The position numbers and the translations under genes were made by a program. The notes under the pieces are model-generated. The model did not search any database. It saw nothing but the letters and a program-made list of their open reading frames with translations, and had not been told where the DNA came from. This document shows positions 1-32,900 of a DNA stretch of 64,000 nucleotides, piece by piece (within the stretch, counting starts at the first letter, position 1; every line of letters begins with the position of its first letter). Location: the NCBI RefSeq assembly GCF_006345805.1, contig NC_043006.1, forward strand, positions 30,566,001-30,630,000, in the 5' to 3' direction. This DNA is from Octopus sinensis. Its lineage: Eukaryota.

Positions 1-1149
1 TTATTATATATATTTTTGATTTATTTCCTAGATTTTCTAATTAGGTATACAATCCTCATCGTTTAACATCTGCTTTCGATGCTGGCATGGGTGGGATGGT
101 TTGGCAGAAGCCTGCACCAGACTTCTATGACTGTTTTGGCAGGATTTTTACATCTGGATGTCCTTCCTAACACCAATCACCCAACAGTAGACTTAGTGCT
201 TTTTACATGACACAAGTACAGGTGAGGTCAGTTTTGGCAAGATTTTTACAGCTGGATGCCTTTCCAAGCGCCAACCACTTCACAGTGTGGACTGGATGCT
301 TTATATGTGGCACCAGCACTGACAGGGTTACCAAGTAACTTGCGAGACAAAAATCTTTTGAGAGGGGAGATGGGCATTGGAGGAGGTGATCTTGTGTCAG
401 TTGATGAAAGGTTATAATGAGGCAGAAACAGGCGTCTTGCTGTACAAGAGGTACAAGGTTACCCAGCTGGGGACGGGGACGGGTGAGAGATCAGGAATGA
501 AGATGGAAACAGGTGTGCTGCCACAAATGATACACTGTTACCCCACCTGAGAGAAGTGGAGGCGAGAGTGGGGGGCAGCAGGATAGAGATGGTGGCAAAG
601 TGCCAGGCATACTCACAAGGGATGGGGATCAGAATATAAATGGGGTGGCTGAGTAAAGGCAGAGAGTGATAGAGATGATGGCAAGTGCCAGGGAATATCC
701 TTGAGGTTTGAAGGTCCTAATATAAGTGACAGGATATTGCCCAAGGAGAAGTGTGATTAGAGAGTGCAGAGAGGAAGTGAGTGGTGAAAACCTGGGTATA
801 TAGTGGGTAGGGCTACCAGGTAGTAGTGATACAGATAAATATGGTCGTGGGGACAGGATTGGAGAGTGAGAAGTAGGCATAGTGTATGAAGGAGGAAATG
901 TGAGGAAGAGAAGAGCTGTATATTGGTTTGTTGGGATAGGATGTGTGAAAAGTTTTCTTGTTACATGTGGCTGGAACACACGTCAGGGCATACCAGGCAG
1001 CAATGATACAGTGTGAAGAGGACAGGATTAAGGAGTGGGAGGTAAGCATAGTGCATAAAGTGGAAATGTAAGGTAGAGATGTAGTTTGGTTTGATGTGGT
1101 AGGATGTGTGAGAAGTTTTCTCGTTAAGTGTGGGTGGGACACACAGCGC

Positions 1150-1990
1150 TTCTAGAACTCAGTTTCGCTGATGTGGGCAGGTCTTCTCAAGAACCTCATA
1201 TCGCCAGACATCTTGGTCCATTGTCATTTCCTTCATGAGGCCCAACATCCTGAGATCAGTCCTTACCACTTCATCCCACGTCTTCCTGGGTCTCCTTCTT
1301 CAGCAGGTACCGTCCACTTTCAGTGATGGGCACTTCTTTATGCAGCTGTCCTCATTCATACACATCACATGTCCAAACCAGCATAGTCTTGCATACTACA
1401 TTTGATTTCTCTTATGCCCATCTTTTCTCTTAATACATGTGCACTGATGTTGCACATTCGACGGAGCATACTACCTTAATTTCTCTCCAGTCTATGCATG
1501 TCTTCTGCATTCAGAGCCCATGTCTTACTACCATTGGGTATAGCCATTCGTACACAAGCATCATATAATCCTACCTTTCACTCTGAGAGAGAGTTCTTTC
1601 ATTTCCAACAAGGTTGTAGCTTCACTTCCACCCTATTCTTATTTAAGAAACAATATTTTCAGAGCATCCTCCACCATTGCTTTTTTGGTCACCTAGGTAA
1701 CAGAAACTATCTACAACTTCAAGAGAGCCTCTTGAGCATTTGAGAAAATCTAATTCCTGTGTGCTGTTAGTGCTTATTGTTCCTGCACATTTGCCACATA
1801 AAAAGACTACTTTATCTGTTAATCTACCTGTGATTCCACTGTACCTCCTATGTGTCCAATAGCTTACGCTGGGTGCAGCAAATGGAATTTCTTCCAACTC
1901 CTATTCTACATATTGAATACTTGACAGGAAGAGTTTTTTCTTACTAACAACAACTTTGGTCTTTGCTGGGTTAACTTTAAACAACTTGTG
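1150..1990 (-). mobile_element. RTE-clade LINE 3' fragment (degenerate)
   Basis: Minus frames give EVVDSFCYLG, WFGHVM and RRRPRKTWDEVVRTDL, typical RTE C-terminal motifs, with stops and frameshifts. Confidence 0.8.
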
Positions 1991-2091
1991 TGGCAAAGGA
2001 CTATTTATTACAGTCAGTTAGAAACTTATTCTTCAGGTTAACCCTAACCCTACTGTTGTCTCTGTAAAGACTTTACTGCTCCACAAAACAT

Positions 2092-2285
2092 CATCATCAT
2101 CATCGTTTAGCGTCTGTTTTCCATGCTAACATGGGTTGGACGGTTCAACTGGGGTTTGTGAAGCCAGAAGGCTTCATCAGGCCCAGTCGGATCTGGCAGT
2201 GTTTCTACGGCTGGATACCCTTCCTAACGCCAACCACTCCGTGAGTGTAGTGGGTGCTTTTTACGTGCCACCCGCACAGGTGCCA
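2092..2285 (-). mobile_element. SINE family C ((GAT)n-tailed), well-preserved partial copy
   Basis: On + reads (cat)n-gtttagcgtctgttttccatgctaacatgggttgg...gctggatacccttcctaacgccaaccac. Copies near 50-350, 2920-3060, 8500-8625, 16145-16330, 18530-18730, 23775-23900, 24412-24576, 36465-36625, 38430-38980, 41060-41425, 44775-44935, 53120-53480, 62480-62815. Confidence 0.8.
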
Positions 2286-2562
2286 GACAAATTAAAAAAA
2301 AAATTTTGTAATCCTCCATGGTATTTTGGTTGTCAGTATATATTTCAATTTGTGATGTATTAGAAACCAATTTATTTTAATGGAATGACACGACTAAATC
2401 AAAGAAGTAGGGTCACTGCGCGATCTGTTTCATTAATTGGCTTATTTGGGATTAAATGACATGCTTTATAGAATGTTAATCTGATGATAAGCTAAGTTTA
2501 TAATTTGATTTCAGTTTACATCTACTCCCTAGTTTCTGACACTGTGTTTTATATTATTCCAG

Positions 2563-2605
2563 AATAGATGTACATCGGCCTCCTGATAATTCTGCTTCAG
2601 AGACG
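2563..2605 (+). CDS. IGF2BP: Imp exon, 43 nt (IDVHRPPDNSASET, end of KH1)
   Basis: ttccAG acceptor, GTgag donor; IDVHR matches the IGF2BP KH1 motif (IDVHRKEN). Confidence 0.85.
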
Positions 2606-5600
2606 GTGAGTTTGGTTTTATTTTTAAACTTTTTCAGTACACCAACAGCTTAAAGAAAAATGGTTTTGTTCAATTCACAAAAACATTACAGAATATGTAT
2701 ATGATTAGATGAGTTAGTAATTTGCCATCAGTGATATCATTATCAGTTTGTATGAAGTCTTTTTGCAATGTAACTTGTTGAGGACTGAAACCTTATTTAA
2801 CAATGCAACAGCCATCAATAAATTACTTTAAATTCCAGTTATTCTTACATTTACAATTCTCATTTACAGCCATCACATAAGACAACAATGCACGTACACT
2901 TTTTATATATCCATATCATTTAACGTCTATATTCCTTGCTGGCATGGGTTGGATGGTTTGACTGGATCTGGCAAAGCCAGAGGACTCTATCAAGCTCTAC
3001 TGACTGCTTTGACATTGGTTCCTACAGCTGAATGCCCTTCCTAAATTCCAAGCACTTTACAGCAGCAGTGGGGTCACAAGACCCCTCAACTGAGTGGAGG
3101 GGGTGTAGTATTGAAGGGGTGGCTTTGTTCCACGTGATGGGAAGTTAACATATGAATAGTGGGAGGAAAATGGGTGTTGGGGAGGTAGATAGACGAAAGA
3201 GGTGGAGAGAAGTGATGGAGGAGGTTTCACCCAAGGTGTGTATGTAATGAAGTGGACTGGGGATTGTGAAAGAGTGGGGGGTGGACACAAGTGGAGGTGG
3301 TGTGAGGAAGGTGGTATGTGGTGGTGGTTGTAGGGAGGTTTGTCAGGTCATAATGGACATACTTTTATGGCTTGTCTACCAAATTCTAGTAGAAGACACT
3401 TGCCCAAGGTGCTGTGCAGTGAGACTGAACCCAAGACTACATTAAGAAGTTTAAGCACACTGCCAATCGTGCACCTGTATGTATGTGCATTTGTGTGTAT
3501 GTGTGTGTGATGATGATGTATATATTTAGAGAGAAAGATTGGTGCAGGTATATTAAATGAATTATATGAATTTCAATGTTGAAACCTGCAACAAAAACAG
3601 CAATTTTACACATTTTAATAGAATATTTTCTTATCCTTTTCCCCATTTTCTCTGCTTACTACATCAACATATCTTACATCTTTAATGTTGCAATCACCAT
3701 TTAAAGTTTGTATTCATTTTCTTTTTCCAAGTTGGTAACAATCAAAGGCAGCTCGAGCAGTTGCACCACAGCATGCAGGGAATTAATGAAAGTTATACTG
3801 CAAGAAGCAACTTCGTTAAATCGGTTTGTTTCATTTAAATAATTAAACTTTCGTTACTGGTTTTATGTAAATTCATCCATTAACATATTTGGTGTGGGTG
3901 ACATGCTTTTTCTTTTTTCAAAAATATAACCCTTGTGCTATATGTGAAGATACATATAGCCCGTTATGTGATTATATTTGTCTTAGAGAAATGCTTTTCT
4001 CGAGCTGTTGGCTACTTTAGACTACTAGTAATTCTATGTTCTAAAGAGAAAGAACCTGTAAATGGTTGCCAGCCTGCTGGAAATATCAACTAAATCTTTC
4101 AAATCTCCTGCTAACATGTAGGATGACTTTGGTCTTGATTCATTGTCTGGAAATAAGACTGGATGATCATGACTGGAATGCCTTTGATCACATAGGGCTG
4201 ATATGGGGCTAAAAGATGGGGTTTATTTTTCCTTCTATCTTTTAACCTATAAATTTTAACGAACATTATTAATTTCGTAACTACAGAGAAAGCATTTAAA
4301 TTCTTTATTTTAAATTGTTAAATGCAGGAAACCTCTTTTCTTGAATATTTCCTATAGAAATTGTTTCATTTTATATGGTAATGTTTTATTAAAACTTTTA
4401 TATTTTCTATAAATTTGAATCCTTAAATTTTTGTCTCCACTAAAACTAAAAGTACTTTCAATATGATATTGTGGTTATGATTTGTTTGTTCAATGTAGAG
4501 AAGAGGTGGGGTTAATATGTGAAATGCTGGAGAAAGGGTGTCATGGTATCAAAACAGTTTCTCTTAATTATAATATCATTTTGACAAAATCTTTCAGAAT
4601 GGATGAGCTAGTAAGTTGAGCTGTTAAATTTTTATGATATAGCAGTTTATTTAAAGTACTTGAGAATTTTGGAAAAATTCTCCCTTCTGCAGAAAAATTT
4701 TTTAAATCTCTGTTAAGTATTTCATATTGGGTCCCATTTATTCTTGCAGATAGTGCTTCAACACTGGAATGTAGCATCAATATTCAAGCTAGCAATTTCA
4801 CAATTTGTTCAAATTTCAGTTGGTCCATAGGGACATAAACTATGCATGACATTGTATGCTTTCATTCTCCTACGTGAATGAAATTCTCATACTTTTTGTA
4901 TTGTCTTTGAAGTTTGAAATACGCTACACATTTTACTACACACAATTGGCAGTATATTATAATGAACATTTTATATCTGAAAAGTACTGCATCTAACTTT
5001 ACCAGACCTGTGCATTATATGTGGTTGCCCTTCTTTACCACAGGTTGAACCATTCATTTTAATAATTGCTACTTTAAATCGTCTGAGAGGAATTAATTTT
5101 ATGTATAATTGGAAAATGTTTGCAAATTTTAGTTTAGCTGGTCTCCTTGCTTGGTACATTTCATTCCACCCTCACACTTTCTTACACTTTCATATTTCAT
5201 TGAAACAATTGCTTTGTATTTTTTCAGAACACACTCATTACGAATATTATGTCCAAATAGTCTTTGTGGTCGTATGATTGGTAAGCATGGTAGTGTCATT
5301 AAAAGTATCATGCAAGACTCAAATTCTCACATTACGGTATCCAGGTATTGTGCTCCTTTTCTCTTTAGCCTTTATTTCCTCTCTCTGCAACTTTATTTCC
5401 ACTTAATATTTTTTTACATTATAGTAAACGCCCCCCTCTTTCCAGACCATCAGATTATATGATTATCTACTTTGATATTAGTTTCATACTTTTAGTTTCT
5501 TACAGCTGTAAGTTTACACACACATTAAAAAAAAATTTTTTTTGCCTGTTACTCTTTCCTTGATTTACCTTGATGTTAATTTACAGTTATTAATATAAGT

Positions 5601-27176: not shown

Positions 27177-27360
27177 ATGGTGAAACCACCTAATGACTCT
27201 AGCACTTACAAGTTGGTCGTAGTCGGAGAAGGTGGTGTCGGTAAGTCGGCACTCACTATCCAGTTCTTTCAGAAACTGTTTGTTCAGGATTATGACCCAA
27301 CAATTGAGGATTCATACATACAACACGAAGATGTTGATGGAATATGGTGTGTCTTGGACG
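27177..27360 (+). CDS. MRAS: M-Ras (R-Ras3)-like small GTPase, coding exon 1 (61 codons + 1 nt)
   Basis: [61 protein letters not shown]: G1 P-loop, effector loop YDPTIEDSY, and the TIQFFQK and W-x-x-LD features typical of M-Ras; strong donor G|GTAAGT at 27360/27361, just before the expected VLDTAGQEE. Confidence 0.88.
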
Positions 27361-29845
27361 GTAAGTGTCCTACTATGCAACTTCATACCCTTCTCTCTCT
27401 GCTTATTTCTTTCATCTTTTACATTCACACGCGCCTTTTCCCCCCTTTTATTATCCATTCCACACTCTCTTTTACTGCCTCTTCTTTTATATCTCTCTCA
27501 TTTACTTTCTTTTTCTCTTCTCTACATCATGTCATACAAACACATTTTCATTTATTCCTCTTTCTTACTCCTTCTTCATGTCCACACGATCCCTTCTCTC
27601 TCTCATATTTTTTCTCTCATTCATATAACATCCACCCACTTTCTTCTTTCCTTTCTCTTTCAACGTTATTCTTTCATTTTCGTTCTCTCTCCTCCCCTAC
27701 ACATTGCTTCCATTTTCCTTTATTTGCTCTTGTTGCCACACTCTTTCATTTATTCTTTGTCTCTCTTGGATAATTCTTTCCGTTCACATGTGCAGCATGA
27801 CTATTTTAAAAACACATAAACGCACCTATCTATACACACACATGAAAAATATAGGAATTCTCGAACGGTAACAAGGAGGTCGCTCATAAATCTGTCCACT
27901 TGTCTGCGTAGTTCTTTATGTGTGTGTTTATGTATGTTGTATACTACAACCTTAAGTGTATATTTTTCAACTGTTGGTATTGAAGAGATAACCTATTGAT
28001 AGGAAGATACAGTAATTATCTACACATGTACCACTGCATGTGCGCGCGTGTATGTGTGTATAGTGTGTGTATACGCACTAGATGTGTATCACAGATTCAC
28101 TTCCTTTATACGCTCAAAAAACAAAACAAGCAAAATAAAAAACGCACATTTACAGAAGCACGCATACATAAATTCAAAGACACACACGCGTATACATACT
28201 GCTGTTGTTTCATTGCTGTGTACATACTGAGGAGGACTAGACGCAAAAGATAAGGACAGATTAAGTTAAAATGTGTTATTAATCAACATGTTTAAGTAGT
28301 GTTAACTAATTCTAGGAGCCTTTCCACCACTGTTTCAACACACACACACACACCTTGCATTCACGCAAAGATCTGGTGCCACCAGATTAAGAATCCGCCT
28401 CACATGGTGGACTAGTTGCAATGGTATAAACCCATAGACTTATCGGTGAACCTCGTAATTCCTTATATCAATACTGTATGTATCTGATATTTTTGTTATC
28501 GATTACAAGGGAATTAAAAGCCCTTTATATTGTATGTTCAAATATTGTTCATTTTTGTAGGGTCGATAAAATAAAATGCCAGTCAATTACTGGGTGGGTT
28601 CAACAAGTCTGAGATTAAATTGAATTATTATAATAGATGACCGGCAAAACCGATGGAACTTGACGTAAAGGGACGAAAAATAGATTTAGTCCTCAGTGTG
28701 CGCTTTTACCATTTTACGGCCGTATGTTGTTTTTTTTTTTTAATTATGTTTTTCAAATTTATCAGGTTAGAAAAATGGTAATTTACAACGTTCAAGCCCC
28801 GCTTGAGGATGATATTGGCAACATAATAAGTAAAAGGAAATAACTTGCAATTAGGGTTGCTGCTGCACTTCATCGAAATGTGACATTCACAACATTTGAA
28901 TAGCTGTGATCCATTGAAATAATCGATTCTAGTATACAATTGATACTTAGTTTTTCGATTCTGATAGGAAGAAATGATGTTAGATTTTTTTATTCTTGGC
29001 AGGATTTAAATTCAGGATCTTGAGAAGTCCCTATAATGTCATAAAACGTCGGTCCGTTGGCTCTGTGTGGTTTACAGACTTCTAAGAATTCTGGGGTTTT
29101 TTTGGCAATATCACAAAGCGTTTGGGGAGTGAAAACGGGATGCTGTTTTGACCTGGGCTTTAGCAGCACTAATGAAGTGAAAGTGGATTTGATAGGGAAT
29201 TGAAACCTTGTTACATACTCAGTTCGGCGTTACAAATCTGAGGTTATTTCGCTAATACATCTTTCATCATCCTTATAACAAGGATTTTCCCACCTCAAAT
29301 TGAGCCCTGTGCATGCCTAATATGTATTTTACCGACCCAGATGAGTTGAAGTTAGCCTCTGAGGATTTGAACCTCAACTGAACAGATATAAAAATTGTCG
29401 TGTTAAGTGGAATTTAACTCCAGAATCATGAAGGGCCAAACTGAATACATTTATTCTGAATCTCCACCATACACACATAAATAATAACAAAAAAAATTCC
29501 AGGACTGCCGCAGACAATGAATGTGTGTGAATTATAACGTTTGTTACTTTTTCAATCGTTACACAGAAGTAAATGTAAGAATTTTAACCAGGAATCGAAA
29601 CTTGCAAAGCGTATTCACTACAGAAGAACCTCATTACTTTCATGTTGGGAAATTGTTTTCGAGTTTATATCATAGTTGCAACGAAAGCTCAACCTATTGA
29701 TTACATGTAATTGTAGAAGACACAAGAAAACGGACAATGTGACAAAAAGTGTCGGATTAAATATCTTGGAGAAATTAGTTTCGTCCATCATCAACATTAC
29801 TCAGTTAACTATTTAGGTGTCATTTGGATTCGATTAAATCGACTA

Positions 29846-29889
<44 letters not shown>

Positions 29890-29896
29890 ACACCTC

Positions 29897-29972
29897 CGGT
29901 CATTTAAGTCTGACGAGTTCCTATAAAGCTGAGCGCTTTATAGGCGCGAAACCAGTGGTCACTCTCTGACCG
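29897..29972 (+). ncRNA. Type I hammerhead ribozyme, intact core, predicted cleavage after C29960
   Basis: CUGACGA 29910-29916; G10.1-C11.1 (29917/29947); GAAA 29948-29951; stem III ACC-AGU-GGU; GUC triplet 29958-29960; stem I AGU/ACU, internal loop, CGGUCA/UGACCG; stem II with a perfect 10-bp helix CCUAUAAAGC/GCUUUAUAGG. Confidence 0.85.
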
Positions 29973-32900
29973 CCAACAAACAACCTTCTTTTGCAAATGT
30001 GTTGTGTGGTCAATATATTCTTCTTGTATTATGATTCGACCCACTACTTGATTGATATTTTATTGACCCTTAGTTGGTTAAAAGGCAAACTTGAGCTCAG
30101 CAGTATTTGAACTCTGAAAGTAAAAGGTATTAACTGAGTCTTGCAGGGAAGTTTGTCCGACGCTCCACCGATTTTGCCAACCCACCAGCTCAGATATTGT
30201 TCCTCTATTAATTATATGCGTGTATATATGACAATTTCTTTCTCGTATATAATTTGGATATCATTACAGGAAAAAACACACGCAATTCTGTTTGCCAGAG
30301 TTCAAGACATGACAATATTCAAAGATATCTTAAATCAACGAAAGAACCTGCCCTTGAAAGTGAGGAGTGTATTTCTGAATATGAATTTGGTTTAGGTTGT
30401 GAGTGTGTGAATGTACACTTGTTCATGTGTTTGTCCGAACCACATGTCTGGGATATTGAACCATTAGTTGCTAAAATATATTTCACTGCAAGCGTTTAGT
30501 CTTTCCTTCGATTGATGCTATTATAAATGCTACCATAACCCTCAATTTTATTAGCTGATGGAGAATAACAGGTTGTAAAAGCTAAAGTGCTGTGACGACT
30601 GGACATTCGTCATTGGTTCACACCACGTCACAGAATATGGAATCATTATTACTCTTAGGGATTTACTTAATTTAGACGGTGACGAGGATTTGTCAGTCTT
30701 GTGTGTTTCCCGTATTTTGTCCATGTTTTCTCCTCATTAGCCAGTATTACACATACACAGGCACACATTGATTAAAGGCAATAACTTGTTGAAGTCGATG
30801 GCTTGTGGTGTTCAAAGGTTGTTTCACTTTTAGGCACAAGCCAGCAATTTTGAGGAAAGGGGTTAGTCGATACAGTTGACCAATACTCGACTGGTCCAAC
30901 ATTTTATTGACCCTGAAAAGATAAAAAGCAAAGTTGACTTCGTCAGGATTGGAATTCAGAACGTAAAAAAAAAAAAAAAAACCGGAATAAATACATCAAG
31001 ACATTTTTTTCCCGATACTTCTACGATTTTACCATCACGTCACTCTTTTATAGTGTTAGAAGATGAATGACATGAATTTCTTCATATTTGGCCTTGTCCT
31101 TTAACATCTCTATAATGTTCCTATTGTTTAGCTCCAGATCAGCCGTGATTCAAAGAATTTACGATCAGAAGCAGTCAAGCCGTGACAATCTCGTCTGTGC
31201 ATCCGGTTCTACATTAACCAATGAGTTTTTCCCTTTTAAGATAATACAGGGAAATTGAACGAAGATTTGGCTGCTATTTCTAGTAATTCGATAATGTTAT
31301 TTCCTTTTTAACACATACAAGCACTATTTAAAGGAACGTATGGAGGGGTCATATAAAGGTTTCTTCTGAAGTGATCCAACTAACAGTCGTATATTTACAA
31401 TGTGGATAAGTATCAGAATGCATACGAATATTAGTTCGTTGCATGAGCTGCAGATTTTGTAACGGTCATGTTTGTTTCGAATGGTAATCGAAACTGAGTC
31501 GTTGAAAAAATGAGGGTTAACGAGTGCCATGTCCTGCTTTCCTAAAAGTGTTAGTGATATACGTGTCTCATTAATGAAGATATACTAATGAATGTGCACA
31601 TGACTAGCAAAAATCCACTTAGGTATTTAAATGTAAGTTATTACATACAGTAACATAGGAAGATGTATACACGCTCGTGTGTGTGTGTATAAACGTGCCT
31701 TCATATACACCTAAGTACCTCGCATTCAACCACACACAGCTTGCGAACACTAATTCTCTTCTCGCAACCTGTTTAGCAACGAATAGTCTTCAGATTTCTC
31801 ATCACGGTTTAATGCTTCTACTCTCAACCACCACCACTGCGTTTAACTCGGCTTTCCTAAGGTGTGACATGTGTCTTTCACAAAATTAATGGTGAAAAGT
31901 AAACTATTTCACCAGCATAGCTCTACACAAAATGTCATTACTTCCATTCCCACTTTTTACCCTTCTCTCTGCTTCCATCTCCATATCTTCACAACCTGTT
32001 ATTACTTTCTTCCTCATCTCCTGCCTCACCGTTCATACCATCTTTTGCTCGCCCATGAGGCCTGTGTTAATCCCTATCAACTGCATTGTTTGAATTGGAA
32101 ATCAGAACACAAAAGATTTTGTTGGTGTGCCGTGAGACGAAGTGAATAAAGATTGTCTCCAGTGGATCCCATTGTGGGACAATGTCTACCGATTAACATA
32201 GAATATTCTTCTAATGCTAATGGTTGTCTTTGTTTACCACGTTATTTGAATTCCCTAGTGTCTGAGCTCTTTCCTCACAAAGAAACAAAGCCTTATCTCT
32301 AGAATTTGGATAACAAAAATAAGTGTTACATGTTGAACATTAGAAAAGTGTTGCTTATATTTTTATTATTCTACTTATTGTACCCATATATGACATACTT
32401 GAGGTGGGCAGGCAAGCACAGGGAACTCCTAATGCTGTCGGAAAAGGGTGTGCACTCTAATATACTCACATTCCACGAAAATATTTTAAAATTAGACCAA
32501 TTTTAGCAGTACTTTGAAGCCATATGAAATGGGTACTTAGACACACCCTGAGAAGCGGTATTTAGTAATTAAATAACTGATGTCATTTACTAATTATTAG
32601 CCATTAATTATGATATCTCAGTCAAAAGTCGAAACTTATGGCAGACTCTAAACTTCAGTAATTACATTCTTTCTATATGTAGACATTAAGCTCAGGACTG
32701 TATAAAATGTTTGGACTGCATCATTATCCTTTTATATAAATACGTGTTTGTAAGCACAACCTTAAAACCTATCGGAAGTTGAGTGTAACAAAACATATTT
32801 AGTCATTACTCATGCCAATGATAGATTAATTACTTCATAACAATCAACCCCATTTTTAATTACCATGATATCACGGTAATGATATGGTATTTAAAAAATA

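What the first reader, a model, noticed from the sequence alone, without database searches (positions are those of the whole stretch)
29897..29972. Intact type I hammerhead ribozyme, sense strand, inside M-Ras intron 1
Seen: every invariant hammerhead core position is present (C3UGACGA9, G10.1-C11.1, G12AAA, A15.1-U16.1, GUC cleavage triplet). All three stems can form: stem I is 3 bp + UUUA/CUC internal loop + 6 perfect bp; stem II is G-C, U-G, one U/C mismatch and a perfect 10-bp helix with a 5-nt loop; stem III is ACC/GGU within the quasi-palindrome ACCA-G-UGGU. It lies 2.6 kb downstream of the M-Ras donor, on the transcribed strand, directly after a (TA)n(TG)n tract, and I see no recognisable element body around it. 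Established: this core self-cleaves 3' of position 17; intronic hammerheads are known in amniotes (HH9/HH10) and hammerheads are carried by Penelope-like elements and retrozymes. Inference: CpGs and pairings are preserved while neighbouring repeats are decayed, so it is either a recent insertion or retained by selection. If active it would cut nascent M-Ras pre-mRNA early in a very long intron, which could affect splicing, trans-splicing or transcript attenuation. The long stem II is atypical, so the loop-loop tertiary contact and cleavage rate are uncertain.
Basis: partly seen in the sequence, partly recalled or inferred. Interest (0 to 1): 0.9.

Follow-up and report, generated by a model that had tools for sequence, protein, structure and literature searches.

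The report
Transposon-borne hammerhead ribozyme in M-Ras intron
The sequence is a real, intact-looking hammerhead ribozyme motif, but it is the leftover 3' end of an old Penelope-like retrotransposon that landed in a microsatellite inside the octopus M-Ras intron, drifts at the neutral rate and is already broken in a sister species, so it is an ordinary transposon passenger, not a gene regulator.

Summary
Window 29897-29972 (+) carries every hammerhead core position and three helices. It lies 2.5 kb into intron 1 of an M-Ras gene, on the sense strand, directly after (AT)10(GT)12.

The interpretation does not hold. The motif is one of at least 522 dispersed copies of a repeat family. Fuller copies carry a GIY-YIG endonuclease ORF 165-200 nt upstream, reverse-transcriptase remnants, an optional 3' tail and flanking (TA)n or (TG)n. 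In 19 of 50 loci there is a head-to-head inverted, 5'-truncated partner. These are hallmarks of Penelope-like elements (PLEs) of the 'Hydra' clade, whose 3' ends are known to carry hammerheads.

The window copy is a roughly 97-bp, 5'-truncated fragment with no partner. The same insertion sits at the same site in Octopus bimaculoides (intact) and in O. vulgaris, where a 29-bp deletion destroys the core and helix II. Its divergence from O. bimaculoides (3.3%) is no lower than that of the flanking intron (5.2%). It is therefore old and shows no sign of constraint.

Helix III is only 3 bp, as in PLE hammerheads that work poorly, and only as dimers. Rfam's Hammerhead_1 model does not detect the motif, probably because helix II is 31 nt long.

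Verdict: a new member of a known kind, of low interest.

The parts
27177..27359 (+). Context: first coding exon of M-Ras (61 aa, [31 protein letters not shown]...WCVLD). The donor G|GTAAGT follows at 27360/27361.
   Evidence: ORF and sequence; 100% identity to residues 1-61 of the Octopus M-Ras protein P0279. No further Ras exon lies in the window.
29846..29889 (.). Microsatellite (AT)10(GT)12. It is the 5' flank of the insertion and a remnant of the (TA)n target.
   Evidence: The orthologues keep (TA)n on both sides of the element. In the family, 34 of 50 copies have a microsatellite within 150 nt of the 3' side, against 28.5% in background windows.
29893..29989 (+). 5'-truncated 3'-terminal fragment of a Hydra-clade Penelope-like element (or of a non-autonomous derivative). 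It lacks the endonuclease ORF, the upstream UTR and the optional 3' tail. The 3' edge is ambiguous over CTTCT at 29986-29990, because a (TA)n tract present in the orthologues has been lost here.
   Evidence: Homology with the other copies spans L001 1504-1600, which is window 29893-29989. The consensus and upstream extension are seen in other copies.
29897..29972 (+). Type I hammerhead motif (helix I open).
29910..29916 (+). Core box C3-U4-G5-A6-C7-G8-A9 (CTGACGA).
   Evidence: The box is conserved in the family consensus and in the sister subfamily.
29917..29947 (+). Helix II: G10.1-C11.1, U-G, a U/C mismatch, a 10-bp perfect stem and the 5-nt loop UGAGC.
   Evidence: pair probability 0.95. 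The perfect stem is specific to this lineage; the O. bimaculoides orthologue and the family consensus have a bulged G and a C/U mismatch.
29948..29960 (+). G12-A13-A14, then helix III A15.1-C-C / G-G-U16.1 with the 3-nt loop AGU, then C17. The predicted cleavage is between 29960 and 29961. ACCAGUGGU is a near-palindrome that could form an extended helix III between two molecules.
   Evidence: The predicted helix III pair probability as a monomer is 0.006. The dimer mechanism for such motifs is described in PMC4209133.

Best explanation
The motif is the hammerhead ribozyme at the 3' end of a Penelope-like retrotransposon of the 'Hydra' clade. That clade has a reverse transcriptase followed by a C-terminal GIY-YIG endonuclease and targets (TA)n.

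Shown:
- A 5'-truncated copy of about 97 bp sits inside a (TA)n microsatellite in M-Ras intron 1, and the insertion predates the common ancestor of O. bimaculoides, O. vulgaris and the window's species.
- It has since changed at about the neutral intron rate.
- In this species and in O. bimaculoides the ribozyme core has stayed intact. In O. vulgaris a deletion destroyed it.

Inferred:
- In the active element the ribozyme would cut tandem or multimeric element transcripts, working as a dimer through an extended helix III.
- As a lone intronic copy with a 3-bp helix III and a competing alternative fold, it should cleave M-Ras pre-mRNA weakly or not at all.
- It has no host function.
For: Family size and hallmarks:
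- It belongs to a dispersed repeat family. At least 44 copies at 82-90% identity were scored, and 522 pattern matches were found against 0 in the control.
- Fuller copies extend upstream into an ORF for a GIY-YIG-like domain 165-200 nt before the hammerhead.
- 19 of 50 loci have a second copy. All 19 include an inverted copy, 18 are simple head-to-head pairs with the 5'-truncated ends abutting, and none is a purely direct tandem.
- Microsatellites are enriched on the 3' side, in 34 of 50 copies against 28.5% in background windows.
- An optional 3' tail is present.
- All of these are described PLE hallmarks (PMC8557442; PMC4209133).

Link to the Hydra clade:
- Homologues of the endonuclease domain include full-length proteins (P0152, P0155) with RWR, DKT, YRDD, a CxCX5C linker and CxxC...E...N...CxH, and with no CCHH motif seen on reading them. 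This is the Hydra-clade signature.
- The same genome holds many frames of about 727 aa with this architecture.
- Reverse-transcriptase remnants lie colinear upstream of the endonuclease domain in L068, L059, L052 and L060.

The fold is real at family level:
- A diverged sister subfamily keeps the same fold, with compensatory changes in helix I and a matched deletion in helix II.
- 77% of cells are paired, against 30-41% for slid controls. The covariation score is 0.168, against 0.057-0.080 for the slid controls.

Age and lack of constraint:
- The insertion is orthologous in O. bimaculoides (intact) and in O. vulgaris (29-bp deletion).
- Its divergence is 3.3%, against 5.2-5.3% in the flanks.

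Predicted activity:
- The hammerhead fold scores -21.2 kcal/mol, against an MFE of -24.8 for a fold that pairs the core with the cleavage site. The helix III pair probability is 0.006.
Against: - No Rfam hammerhead model matches, even at E<=10. The hammerhead call therefore rests on the descriptor, the core identities and family-level covariation.
- The covariation comes mostly from one split between two subfamilies, so it reflects few independent events.
- For the window's own subfamily I documented endonuclease followed by hammerhead in 7 loci. Reverse transcriptase, endonuclease and hammerhead together appear only in the degraded locus L060. The complete colinear arrangement (L068) belongs to the sister subfamily.
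- Many copies have low-complexity sequence where the reverse transcriptase should be. The immediate source may therefore have been a non-autonomous derivative.
- All four differences from O. bimaculoides fall in helix II, and two substitutions plus the lost bulge improve pairing. A selectionist could read that as constraint. Taken post hoc, the chance of that placement is about 0.03.
- Self-cleavage was not measured.
Confidence: 0.85

Rival explanations
1. Domesticated intronic ribozyme. The hammerhead is kept by selection and cuts nascent M-Ras pre-mRNA early in the long intron to tune splicing or transcript levels, as proposed for the amniote HH9/HH10 motifs.
For: - The core is intact and CpGs are retained in this species and in O. 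bimaculoides.
- The motif is on the sense strand, 2.5 kb into a 23-39 kb intron.
- All changes since the split from O. bimaculoides lie in helix II and improve its pairing.
Against: - It is destroyed by a 29-bp deletion in O. vulgaris, the closest relative at about 1% divergence.
- Its divergence is not significantly below the neutral flanks: 3 substitutions seen against 4.8 expected.
- No family copy lies in the Argonauta M-Ras locus.
- It is one of hundreds of copies, about a third of which keep the core by chance.
- Helix III is weak and the copy has no partner for dimerisation (PMC4209133).
Confidence: 0.04
2. Copy of a non-LTR 'retrozyme'. This would be a small non-autonomous element carrying a hammerhead, which is transcribed from tandem repeats, self-cleaves, circularises and is mobilised in trans by PLE enzymes.
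For: - Many family members lack a reverse transcriptase and carry only low-complexity sequence, the endonuclease remnant and the hammerhead.
- Short forms with an inverted tail fused to the hammerhead block recur (L002 and L012).
- Animal retrozymes are reported to derive from PLE pseudo-LTRs (bioRxiv 10.64898/2026.07.22.740005; PMC7229834).
- A retrozyme-like pair of canonical hammerheads 431 bp apart exists elsewhere in this genome.
Against: - None of the 50 sampled loci has direct tandem copies of this family, and tandem arrangement is the defining feature of retrozymes. All 19 multi-copy loci include an inverted copy and 18 are simple head-to-head pairs.
- The copies are 5'-truncated at variable points and colinear with endonuclease and reverse-transcriptase remnants.
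Confidence: 0.08
3. A chance match to the hammerhead consensus in AT-rich intronic sequence.
For: - No Rfam hit.
- A loose descriptor gives 0.21 hits per simulated window.
Against: - 522 family copies against 0 in the reversed control.
- The core and helices are conserved in two diverged subfamilies with compensatory changes.
- The position, near the 3' end of a PLE, is exactly where hammerheads are known to occur (PMC8557442).
Confidence: 0.01

Closest known systems
Hammerhead ribozymes in the pseudo-LTRs / 3' ends of Penelope-like elements (Cervera & de la Pena 2014, PMC4209133; Craig et al. 2021, PMC8557442), in particular the Hydra clade
   Same: - Type I topology.
- Helix II longer than usual, with an unpaired nucleotide near its 5' base in the family consensus.
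- Short helix III with a near-palindromic loop, which implies action as a dimer.
- Location near the element's 3' end, downstream of a C-terminal GIY-YIG endonuclease.
- Head-to-head inverted partners 10-150 bp apart.
- 5' truncation.
- Insertion into (TA)n.
   Different: - Helix II is much longer here (12-14 bp with a 5-nt loop, against 6-8 bp), so the usual loop 1-loop 2 contact cannot use the terminal loop.
- Helix III has 3 bp, not 0-2.
- Craig et al. reported Hydra-clade families from only a small number of mollusc and other invertebrate genomes. Here they are abundant in an octopus.
- The window copy is a solo fragment with no partner.
Rfam Hammerhead_1 (RF00163), the classical metazoan type I hammerheads (Schistosoma Sm-alpha, newt satellite 2, cave cricket)
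   Same: - The same invariant core, the same topology and a short helix III.
- Members of RF00163 do occur in this genome (7 hits above gathering).
   Different: This motif scores below E=10 against RF00163. The model has 45 positions, and the 31-nt helix II here probably costs too much as an insertion.
Amniote intronic hammerheads HH9/HH10 (Rfam RF02275, RF02277)
   Same: An intact hammerhead on the sense strand of a long intron of a conserved gene.
   Different: - HH9 and HH10 are single-copy type III motifs conserved across amniotes (from my own knowledge).
- This one is a type I repeat copy, shared only within Octopus, lost in O. vulgaris and evolving neutrally.
Non-LTR retrozymes of animals (Cervera & de la Pena 2020, PMC7229834)
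   Same: Type I hammerhead, small non-coding unit, related to PLE 3' ends.
   Different: No tandem arrangement was seen in 50 sampled loci. Circular RNA was not tested.

Membership tests
Hammerhead ribozyme, type I | Invariant core: C3 U4 G5 A6 N7 G8 A9, G12 A13 A14, A15.1-U16.1, and H17 not G | tested here: met
   CTGACGA 29910-16, GAA 29948-50, A29951 paired with T29959, C29960. It is the only descriptor hit in the window.
Hammerhead ribozyme, type I | Three helices around the core, with helix I open (5' and 3' ends in helix I) | tested here: met
   - Helix I is 3+6 bp, helix II 2+10 bp and helix III 3 bp.
- Across 44 family sequences, 77.1% of cells are paired, against 30-41% for slid controls.
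- Pairs 19:76 and 20:75 change on both sides.
- The variation is mostly between two subfamilies.
Hammerhead ribozyme, type I | Match to the curated covariance model (Rfam RF00163 gathering score of 34 bits) | tested here: not met
   No hit at gathering thresholds or at E<=10 on 501 nt. The 31-nt helix II against a 45-position model is a plausible cause, but I did not test it directly.
Hammerhead ribozyme, type I | Site-specific self-cleavage 3' of position 17 | not testable with these tools
   Thermodynamic prediction only. The hammerhead fold scores -21.2 kcal/mol against an MFE of -24.8, and the helix III pair probability is 0.006.
Penelope-like element, Hydra clade (Craig et al. 2021) | Single ORF with a reverse transcriptase followed by a C-terminal GIY-YIG endonuclease. 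Motifs: RWK, DKT in place of DKG, a CxCX5C linker, no CCHH, and CxxC / CxH around the conserved E and N | tested here: met
   This was tested for the family, not for the window fragment.
- Frames of about 727 aa in this genome carry RLRWK, SDKT, YRDD, CNCKNESSC, KCKLCLLEK...NQRSE...CRH.
- Homologues P0152 and P0155 show the same.
- The criteria are quoted.
- Absence of CCHH was judged by reading the sequences, not by a separate search.
- Pfam gives only a sub-threshold GIY-YIG hit (E=0.029).
- The window fragment contains none of the ORF.
Penelope-like element, Hydra clade (Craig et al. 2021) | Hammerhead near the 3' end / in the pseudo-LTR | tested here: met
   - The hammerhead lies 165-200 nt downstream of the endonuclease ORF in L044, L045, L047, L049, L050, L058 and L064.
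- A diverged hammerhead sits at the same place in 12 loci of the sister subfamily.
Penelope-like element, Hydra clade (Craig et al. 2021) | Insertion into (TA)n; 5' truncation; an inverted 5'-truncated copy adjacent; an optional tail | tested here: met
   - The orthologues show the element embedded in (TA)n.
- Of 50 loci, 19 hold a second copy; 18 are head-to-head inverted pairs and none is a direct tandem.
- 34 of 50 copies have a 3' microsatellite.
- The tail is present or absent among copies.
Penelope-like element, Hydra clade (Craig et al. 2021) | Phylogenetic placement of the reverse transcriptase within the Hydra clade | not tested
   No reference PLE reverse-transcriptase set was available, so the assignment rests on diagnostic motifs only.
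Non-LTR retrozyme | Tandem direct repeats of a 150-400 nt hammerhead-bearing unit, giving circular RNAs | tested here: not met
   No purely direct tandem was found among 50 loci of this family. Circular RNA is not testable here.
Conserved host intronic ribozyme (HH9/HH10-like) | Single-copy, orthologously conserved with an intact core, and below-neutral divergence | tested here: not met
   - It is multi-copy.
- The core is deleted in O. vulgaris.
- Its divergence is 3.3% against 5.2% in the flanks, which is not significant.
- It is absent from the Argonauta locus.

The most novel reading that the evidence does not exclude
The lone copy is catalytically competent in vivo. This could happen through the lineage-specific perfected helix II, or by pairing in trans with transcripts of other family copies. 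It would then cleave some nascent M-Ras pre-mRNA in the window's species and in O. bimaculoides but not in O. vulgaris. That would be a natural presence/absence polymorphism of an intronic ribozyme between sister octopus species.
Probability: 0.05. Interest if true: 0.6.

Novelty: new member of a known kind. Interest (0 to 1): 0.2.

Why it matters
It matters mainly as a caution and as an annotation aid.

- **Caution.** A perfect-looking ribozyme in an intron of a signalling gene turns out to be transposon debris. Orthologue comparison settles this directly: the motif is neutral, and it is broken in a sister species.
- **Annotation.** Octopus genomes carry hundreds to thousands of hammerheads from Hydra-clade Penelope-like elements. 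Their long helix II makes them invisible to Rfam's Hammerhead_1 model. A dedicated covariance model would improve both ribozyme and repeat annotation in cephalopods.
- **Natural experiment.** The three-species series (bulged helix II, perfected helix II, deleted) is a small ready-made test of whether such PLE hammerheads cleave at all.

Tried and rejected
- **Rfam.** Scans at gathering thresholds and at E<=10 gave no hammerhead hit. The only 'hits' (SCARNA7, mir-297, AniS) are microsatellite artefacts.
- **Upstream extension.** Extending six copies 7 kb upstream by DNA found no shared body beyond about 350-520 bp. The link to a coding region appeared only at protein level.
- **Pfam.** Scans of the octopus ORF pieces and of homologues gave nothing above threshold. 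The only result was GIY-YIG at E=0.03-0.05. The PDB sequence search gave nothing.
- **Adjacent fragments in L043.** PLE-like reverse-transcriptase and GIY-YIG fragments lie 1.85 kb upstream of its hammerhead. I set them aside as a probable separate, neighbouring element.
- **Sampling more copies.** These were chosen for similarity and are therefore biased towards well-kept copies.
- **Intact-ORF PLE family.** The strict descriptor found no hammerhead in the loci of the intact-ORF family (L090-L093). Only a non-canonical CTGATGA...GAAAC motif lies upstream of the ORF. That young family is therefore not shown to carry this hammerhead.
- **Argonauta hians.** Only exon 1 of the M-Ras locus aligns. 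'Absent' there means that no family copy lies in the 47-kb locus. It is not a demonstrated empty site.
- **Cofold.** The dimer cofold did not return an extended helix III as the minimum-energy structure. The dimer mechanism is therefore inferred from the literature, not from this calculation.

Full report
**1. The observation**

Window 29897-29972 (+) reads CGGTCATTTAAGT-CTGACGA-GTTCCTATAAAGCTGAGCGCTTTATAGGCGC-GAAA-CCAGTGG-TC-ACTCTCTGACCG.

Every invariant hammerhead position is present:
- C3-A9 is 29910-16.
- G12-A14 is 29948-50.
- A15.1 (29951) pairs with U16.1 (29959).
- C17 is 29960, so the cut would fall between 29960 and 29961.

- Helix I is 3 bp, then the internal loop UUUA/CUC, then 6 bp.
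- Helix II is G-C, U-G, a U/C mismatch, then 10 bp with the loop UGAGC.
- Helix III is ACC/GGU around the loop AGU.

A hammerhead descriptor of my own finds exactly this one hit on both strands of the 64-kb window. Simulated windows give 0.21 loose hits, and 0.04 hits with comparable helices II and III.

Rfam does not see the motif. There were no hits at gathering thresholds over the window and no hammerhead family at E<=10 over 29700-30200. The RF00163 model has only 45 positions. The 31-nt helix II is the likely reason for the miss, but I could not test that directly.

**2. Gene context**

Window 27177-27359 (+) encodes [31 protein letters not shown]...WCVLD, followed by G|GTAAGT. These 61 residues are identical to the N-terminus of the annotated M-Ras protein, which is the same in O. 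vulgaris, O. bimaculoides and O. sinensis (P0279).

In the orthologous gene models, exon 2 lies 39 kb downstream in O. vulgaris and 23 kb downstream in O. bimaculoides. Transcription itself was not tested.

**3. It is a repeat**

- The 91-nt region has at least 44 scored copies at 82-90% identity, spread over many chromosomes.
- A 34-nt pattern from its 3' half matches 522 sites at up to 3 mismatches. The reversed control matches none.
- The mismatches are dominated by CpG to TpG or CpA changes, which is the signature of neutral decay.
- The genome is 2.72 Gb in 13,516 contigs. It differs from O. vulgaris by about 1% in this intron. It is therefore an Octopus very close to O. vulgaris. That it is O. 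sinensis is my inference.

**4. What the repeat is**

Shape of the copies:
- Aligned copies share sequence upstream of the hammerhead (...TTACAAAACTAACTGACCATGACGTTTTCCTCCCTCCNGTTGTAGAGAGGTTAT|GTGCCTCCGG...).
- They end at ...CAAACAACCTTCTAAA.
- After that come either a microsatellite or an optional tail of about 55-100 nt containing a small hairpin, and then a microsatellite.

The coding region upstream:
- At 165-200 nt upstream, fuller copies carry the end of an ORF. Its product (YIGxTxxxFKxRxxxH...SxHIWxL...WKIL...CKLCxxE...N...CxH) is a diverged GIY-YIG nuclease domain. Pfam gives E=0.029, below threshold.
- HMMER against 1.84 billion representative proteins finds 2,867 relatives. The best is an O. 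bimaculoides 'uncharacterized protein'.
- Longer members of the hit clusters (P0152, 716 aa; P0155, 813 aa) have a reverse transcriptase (YRDD), RWR and DKT motifs, a CxCX5C linker and this nuclease. I saw no CCHH motif on reading them.
- This is the diagnostic set that Craig et al. 2021 give for the 'Hydra' clade of Penelope-like elements (PLEs). They describe that clade as short, as inserting into (TA)n, and as always carrying canonical hammerheads.

Evidence in this genome:
- It contains many such frames of about 727 aa. At least 90 were scored, out of 15,262 first-look candidates.
- Reverse-transcriptase remnants lie colinear upstream of the nuclease domain in L068, L059, L052 and L060.

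Structural hallmarks:
- 19 of 50 loci hold a second copy.
- All 19 include an inverted copy. 18 are simple head-to-head pairs with the 5'-truncated ends abutting. None is a purely direct tandem.
- 34 of 50 copies have a microsatellite within 150 nt on the 3' side, against 28.5% of background windows.
- These match the published description of PLE insertions.

**5. The hammerhead is a real, selected feature of the element**

A sister subfamily, whose nuclease is about 45-60% identical, has a diverged motif at the same position:

GGGAU|CUGANGA|UACG-CCAUAAAG-CUAAACC-CUUUAUGG-AUGG|GAAA|CC-CAN-GG|UA|AUCCC

- Proximal helix I differs by compensatory changes: A-U to G-C and G-C to A-U.
- Helix II has lost one nucleotide on each strand.
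- H17 is A instead of C.

On a 44-sequence alignment of both subfamilies:
- 77.1% of cells pair, against 30-41% when partners are slid.
- The covariation score is 0.168, against 0.057-0.080 for the slid controls.
- None of 500 shuffles reaches the observed values.

This variation reflects few independent events, so it is supporting evidence and not proof.

**6. The window copy**

It is a fragment of about 97 bp (29893-29989). It begins directly after (AT)10(GT)12, has no ORF, no tail and no inverted partner.

It is not exceptional within the family:
- It differs from the family consensus at about 8 of 81 positions, against a median of 10 of 85.
- It has 6 CpGs, against a median of 4 and a range of 0-8.
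- 21 of 63 sampled copies keep the complete core pattern. The sample is biased towards well-kept copies.

**7. Orthologues decide the selection question**

The M-Ras loci of O. vulgaris (L094) and O. bimaculoides (L095) align to the window continuously across the site (97.2% and 89.5% identity over about 7 kb).

- **Age.** Both species carry the insertion at the same position, so it predates their common ancestor.
- **O. bimaculoides.** The hammerhead is intact but has the family-type helix II (GTTGCCTATACGGCTAAGC..., with a bulged G, a C/U mismatch and a G-U pair).
- **The window's lineage.** It lost the bulge and changed CG to AA, which produced the perfect 10-bp stem.
- **O. vulgaris.** A 29-bp deletion removes A6-A9 of the core and nearly all of helix II, and GAAAC has become GAAAT.
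- **3' junction.** In O. bimaculoides it reads ...CAAACAACCTTCTA(TA)nCTTCTTTTGC. The element therefore sat inside (TA)n. The window has since lost that tract between two CTTCT repeats.
- **Rate.** Substitution divergence between the window and O. bimaculoides is 5.2-5.3% in 5.6 kb of flanks. It is 3 of 92 (3.3%) plus one indel in the element. With 4.8 substitutions expected, seeing 3 is unremarkable.
- **Argonauta hians.** Only exon 1 aligns, and no family copy lies in the 47-kb locus.

One sister lineage has already lost it.

**8. How it most likely works**

Shown:
- The sequence and the potential fold.
- The family membership.
- The orthology and the neutral rate of change.

Inferred from published PLE hammerheads (PMC4209133):
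- In the element, the ribozyme processes multimeric or tandem transcripts.
- It acts as a dimer through an extended helix III.
- Single copies of such motifs showed no detectable cleavage in vitro. Dimers cleaved weakly.

Here the monomer's hammerhead fold (-21.2 kcal/mol) loses to a fold that pairs U4-C7 with the cleavage-site strand (-24.8 kcal/mol). Helix III has a predicted pair probability of 0.006. ACCAGUGGU could form 4+4 bp with one G/G mismatch between two molecules, but there is no second copy in the window. I therefore expect little or no cleavage of M-Ras pre-mRNA.

**9. Comparison with what is known, and novelty**

- It works like the PLE and 'minimal' type I hammerheads and belongs with them.
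- It fails Rfam's RF00163 model.
- It is not a retrozyme by arrangement, because no tandem copies were found.
- It is not an HH9/HH10-type conserved host motif.
- It is a new member of a known kind.
- The mildly new points are the very long helix II and the abundance of Hydra-clade PLEs with hammerheads in an octopus genome.

**10. Verdict**

- Interest is 0.2.

Noticed in passing
G000:C16:25146363-25146839 (loci L036/L037): Two canonical small type I hammerheads (gtatCTGAAGAgacccagaatgggtcGAAAcatgtgTCgtac) lie in direct orientation 431 bp apart. Both score above the RF00163 gathering threshold. The arrangement resembles a retrozyme or tandem-repeat array and belongs to a different hammerhead family from the one in the window. 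RF00163 gave 7 hits above threshold in the genome.
   Followed up: partly
G000, many sites (for example the places listed; loci L090-L093): Many nearly identical copies of a Hydra-clade Penelope-like element have uninterrupted frames of about 727 aa (reverse transcriptase, CxCX5C linker, GIY-YIG). This suggests recent activity in this octopus genome. The first look gave 15,262 candidates. Craig et al. 2021 reported this clade from only a small number of mollusc and other invertebrate genomes.
   Followed up: partly
L091, about 190 nt upstream of the ORF start (reverse strand of the locus): A non-canonical hammerhead-like string, ACTGT-CTGATGA-ACGGCAACGA-GAAAC-TCAGAG-TA-ACAG, lies upstream of the intact-ORF PLE family. 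Its 10.1/11.1 pair and helix II do not fit the strict descriptor.
   Followed up: no
O. bimaculoides XP_014771448.1 (P0001); loci L064-L069: A protein annotated as 'uncharacterized protein DDB_G0287625-like' is a transposon-derived frame. It consists of a low-complexity N/S/T-rich stretch fused to the PLE GIY-YIG domain. In many octopus copies, low-complexity sequence replaces the reverse transcriptase, which suggests non-autonomous derivatives.
   Followed up: partly
window 29985-29990 compared with L094:4806-4824 and L095:4821-4835: The (TA)n tract that follows the element in O. vulgaris and O. bimaculoides is missing in the window. It was apparently deleted between two CTTCT direct repeats.
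   Followed up: yes
window 29753-29899: The 'SCARNA7' match (E=0.0012, 23 bits against a gathering score of 65) and the mir-297, AniS and mir-3149 matches are artefacts of the (AT)n(GT)n microsatellite.
   Followed up: yes
L002 and L012, immediately 5' of the hammerhead block: In both loci an inverted copy of the element's 3' tail (tggtcagtagtt...gaaaaagaagcacac) is fused at the same point to CCTC(T/C)GG. This suggests a short, amplified, rearranged subfamily with terminal inverted repeats. The window copy begins with the same ACAC-CTCCGG junction.
   Followed up: no
L039 about 970-5050 (minus strand): A LINE-type element (AP-endonuclease and reverse-transcriptase frames) lies directly upstream of one hammerhead-family copy. 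It appears to be an unrelated neighbour.
   Followed up: no
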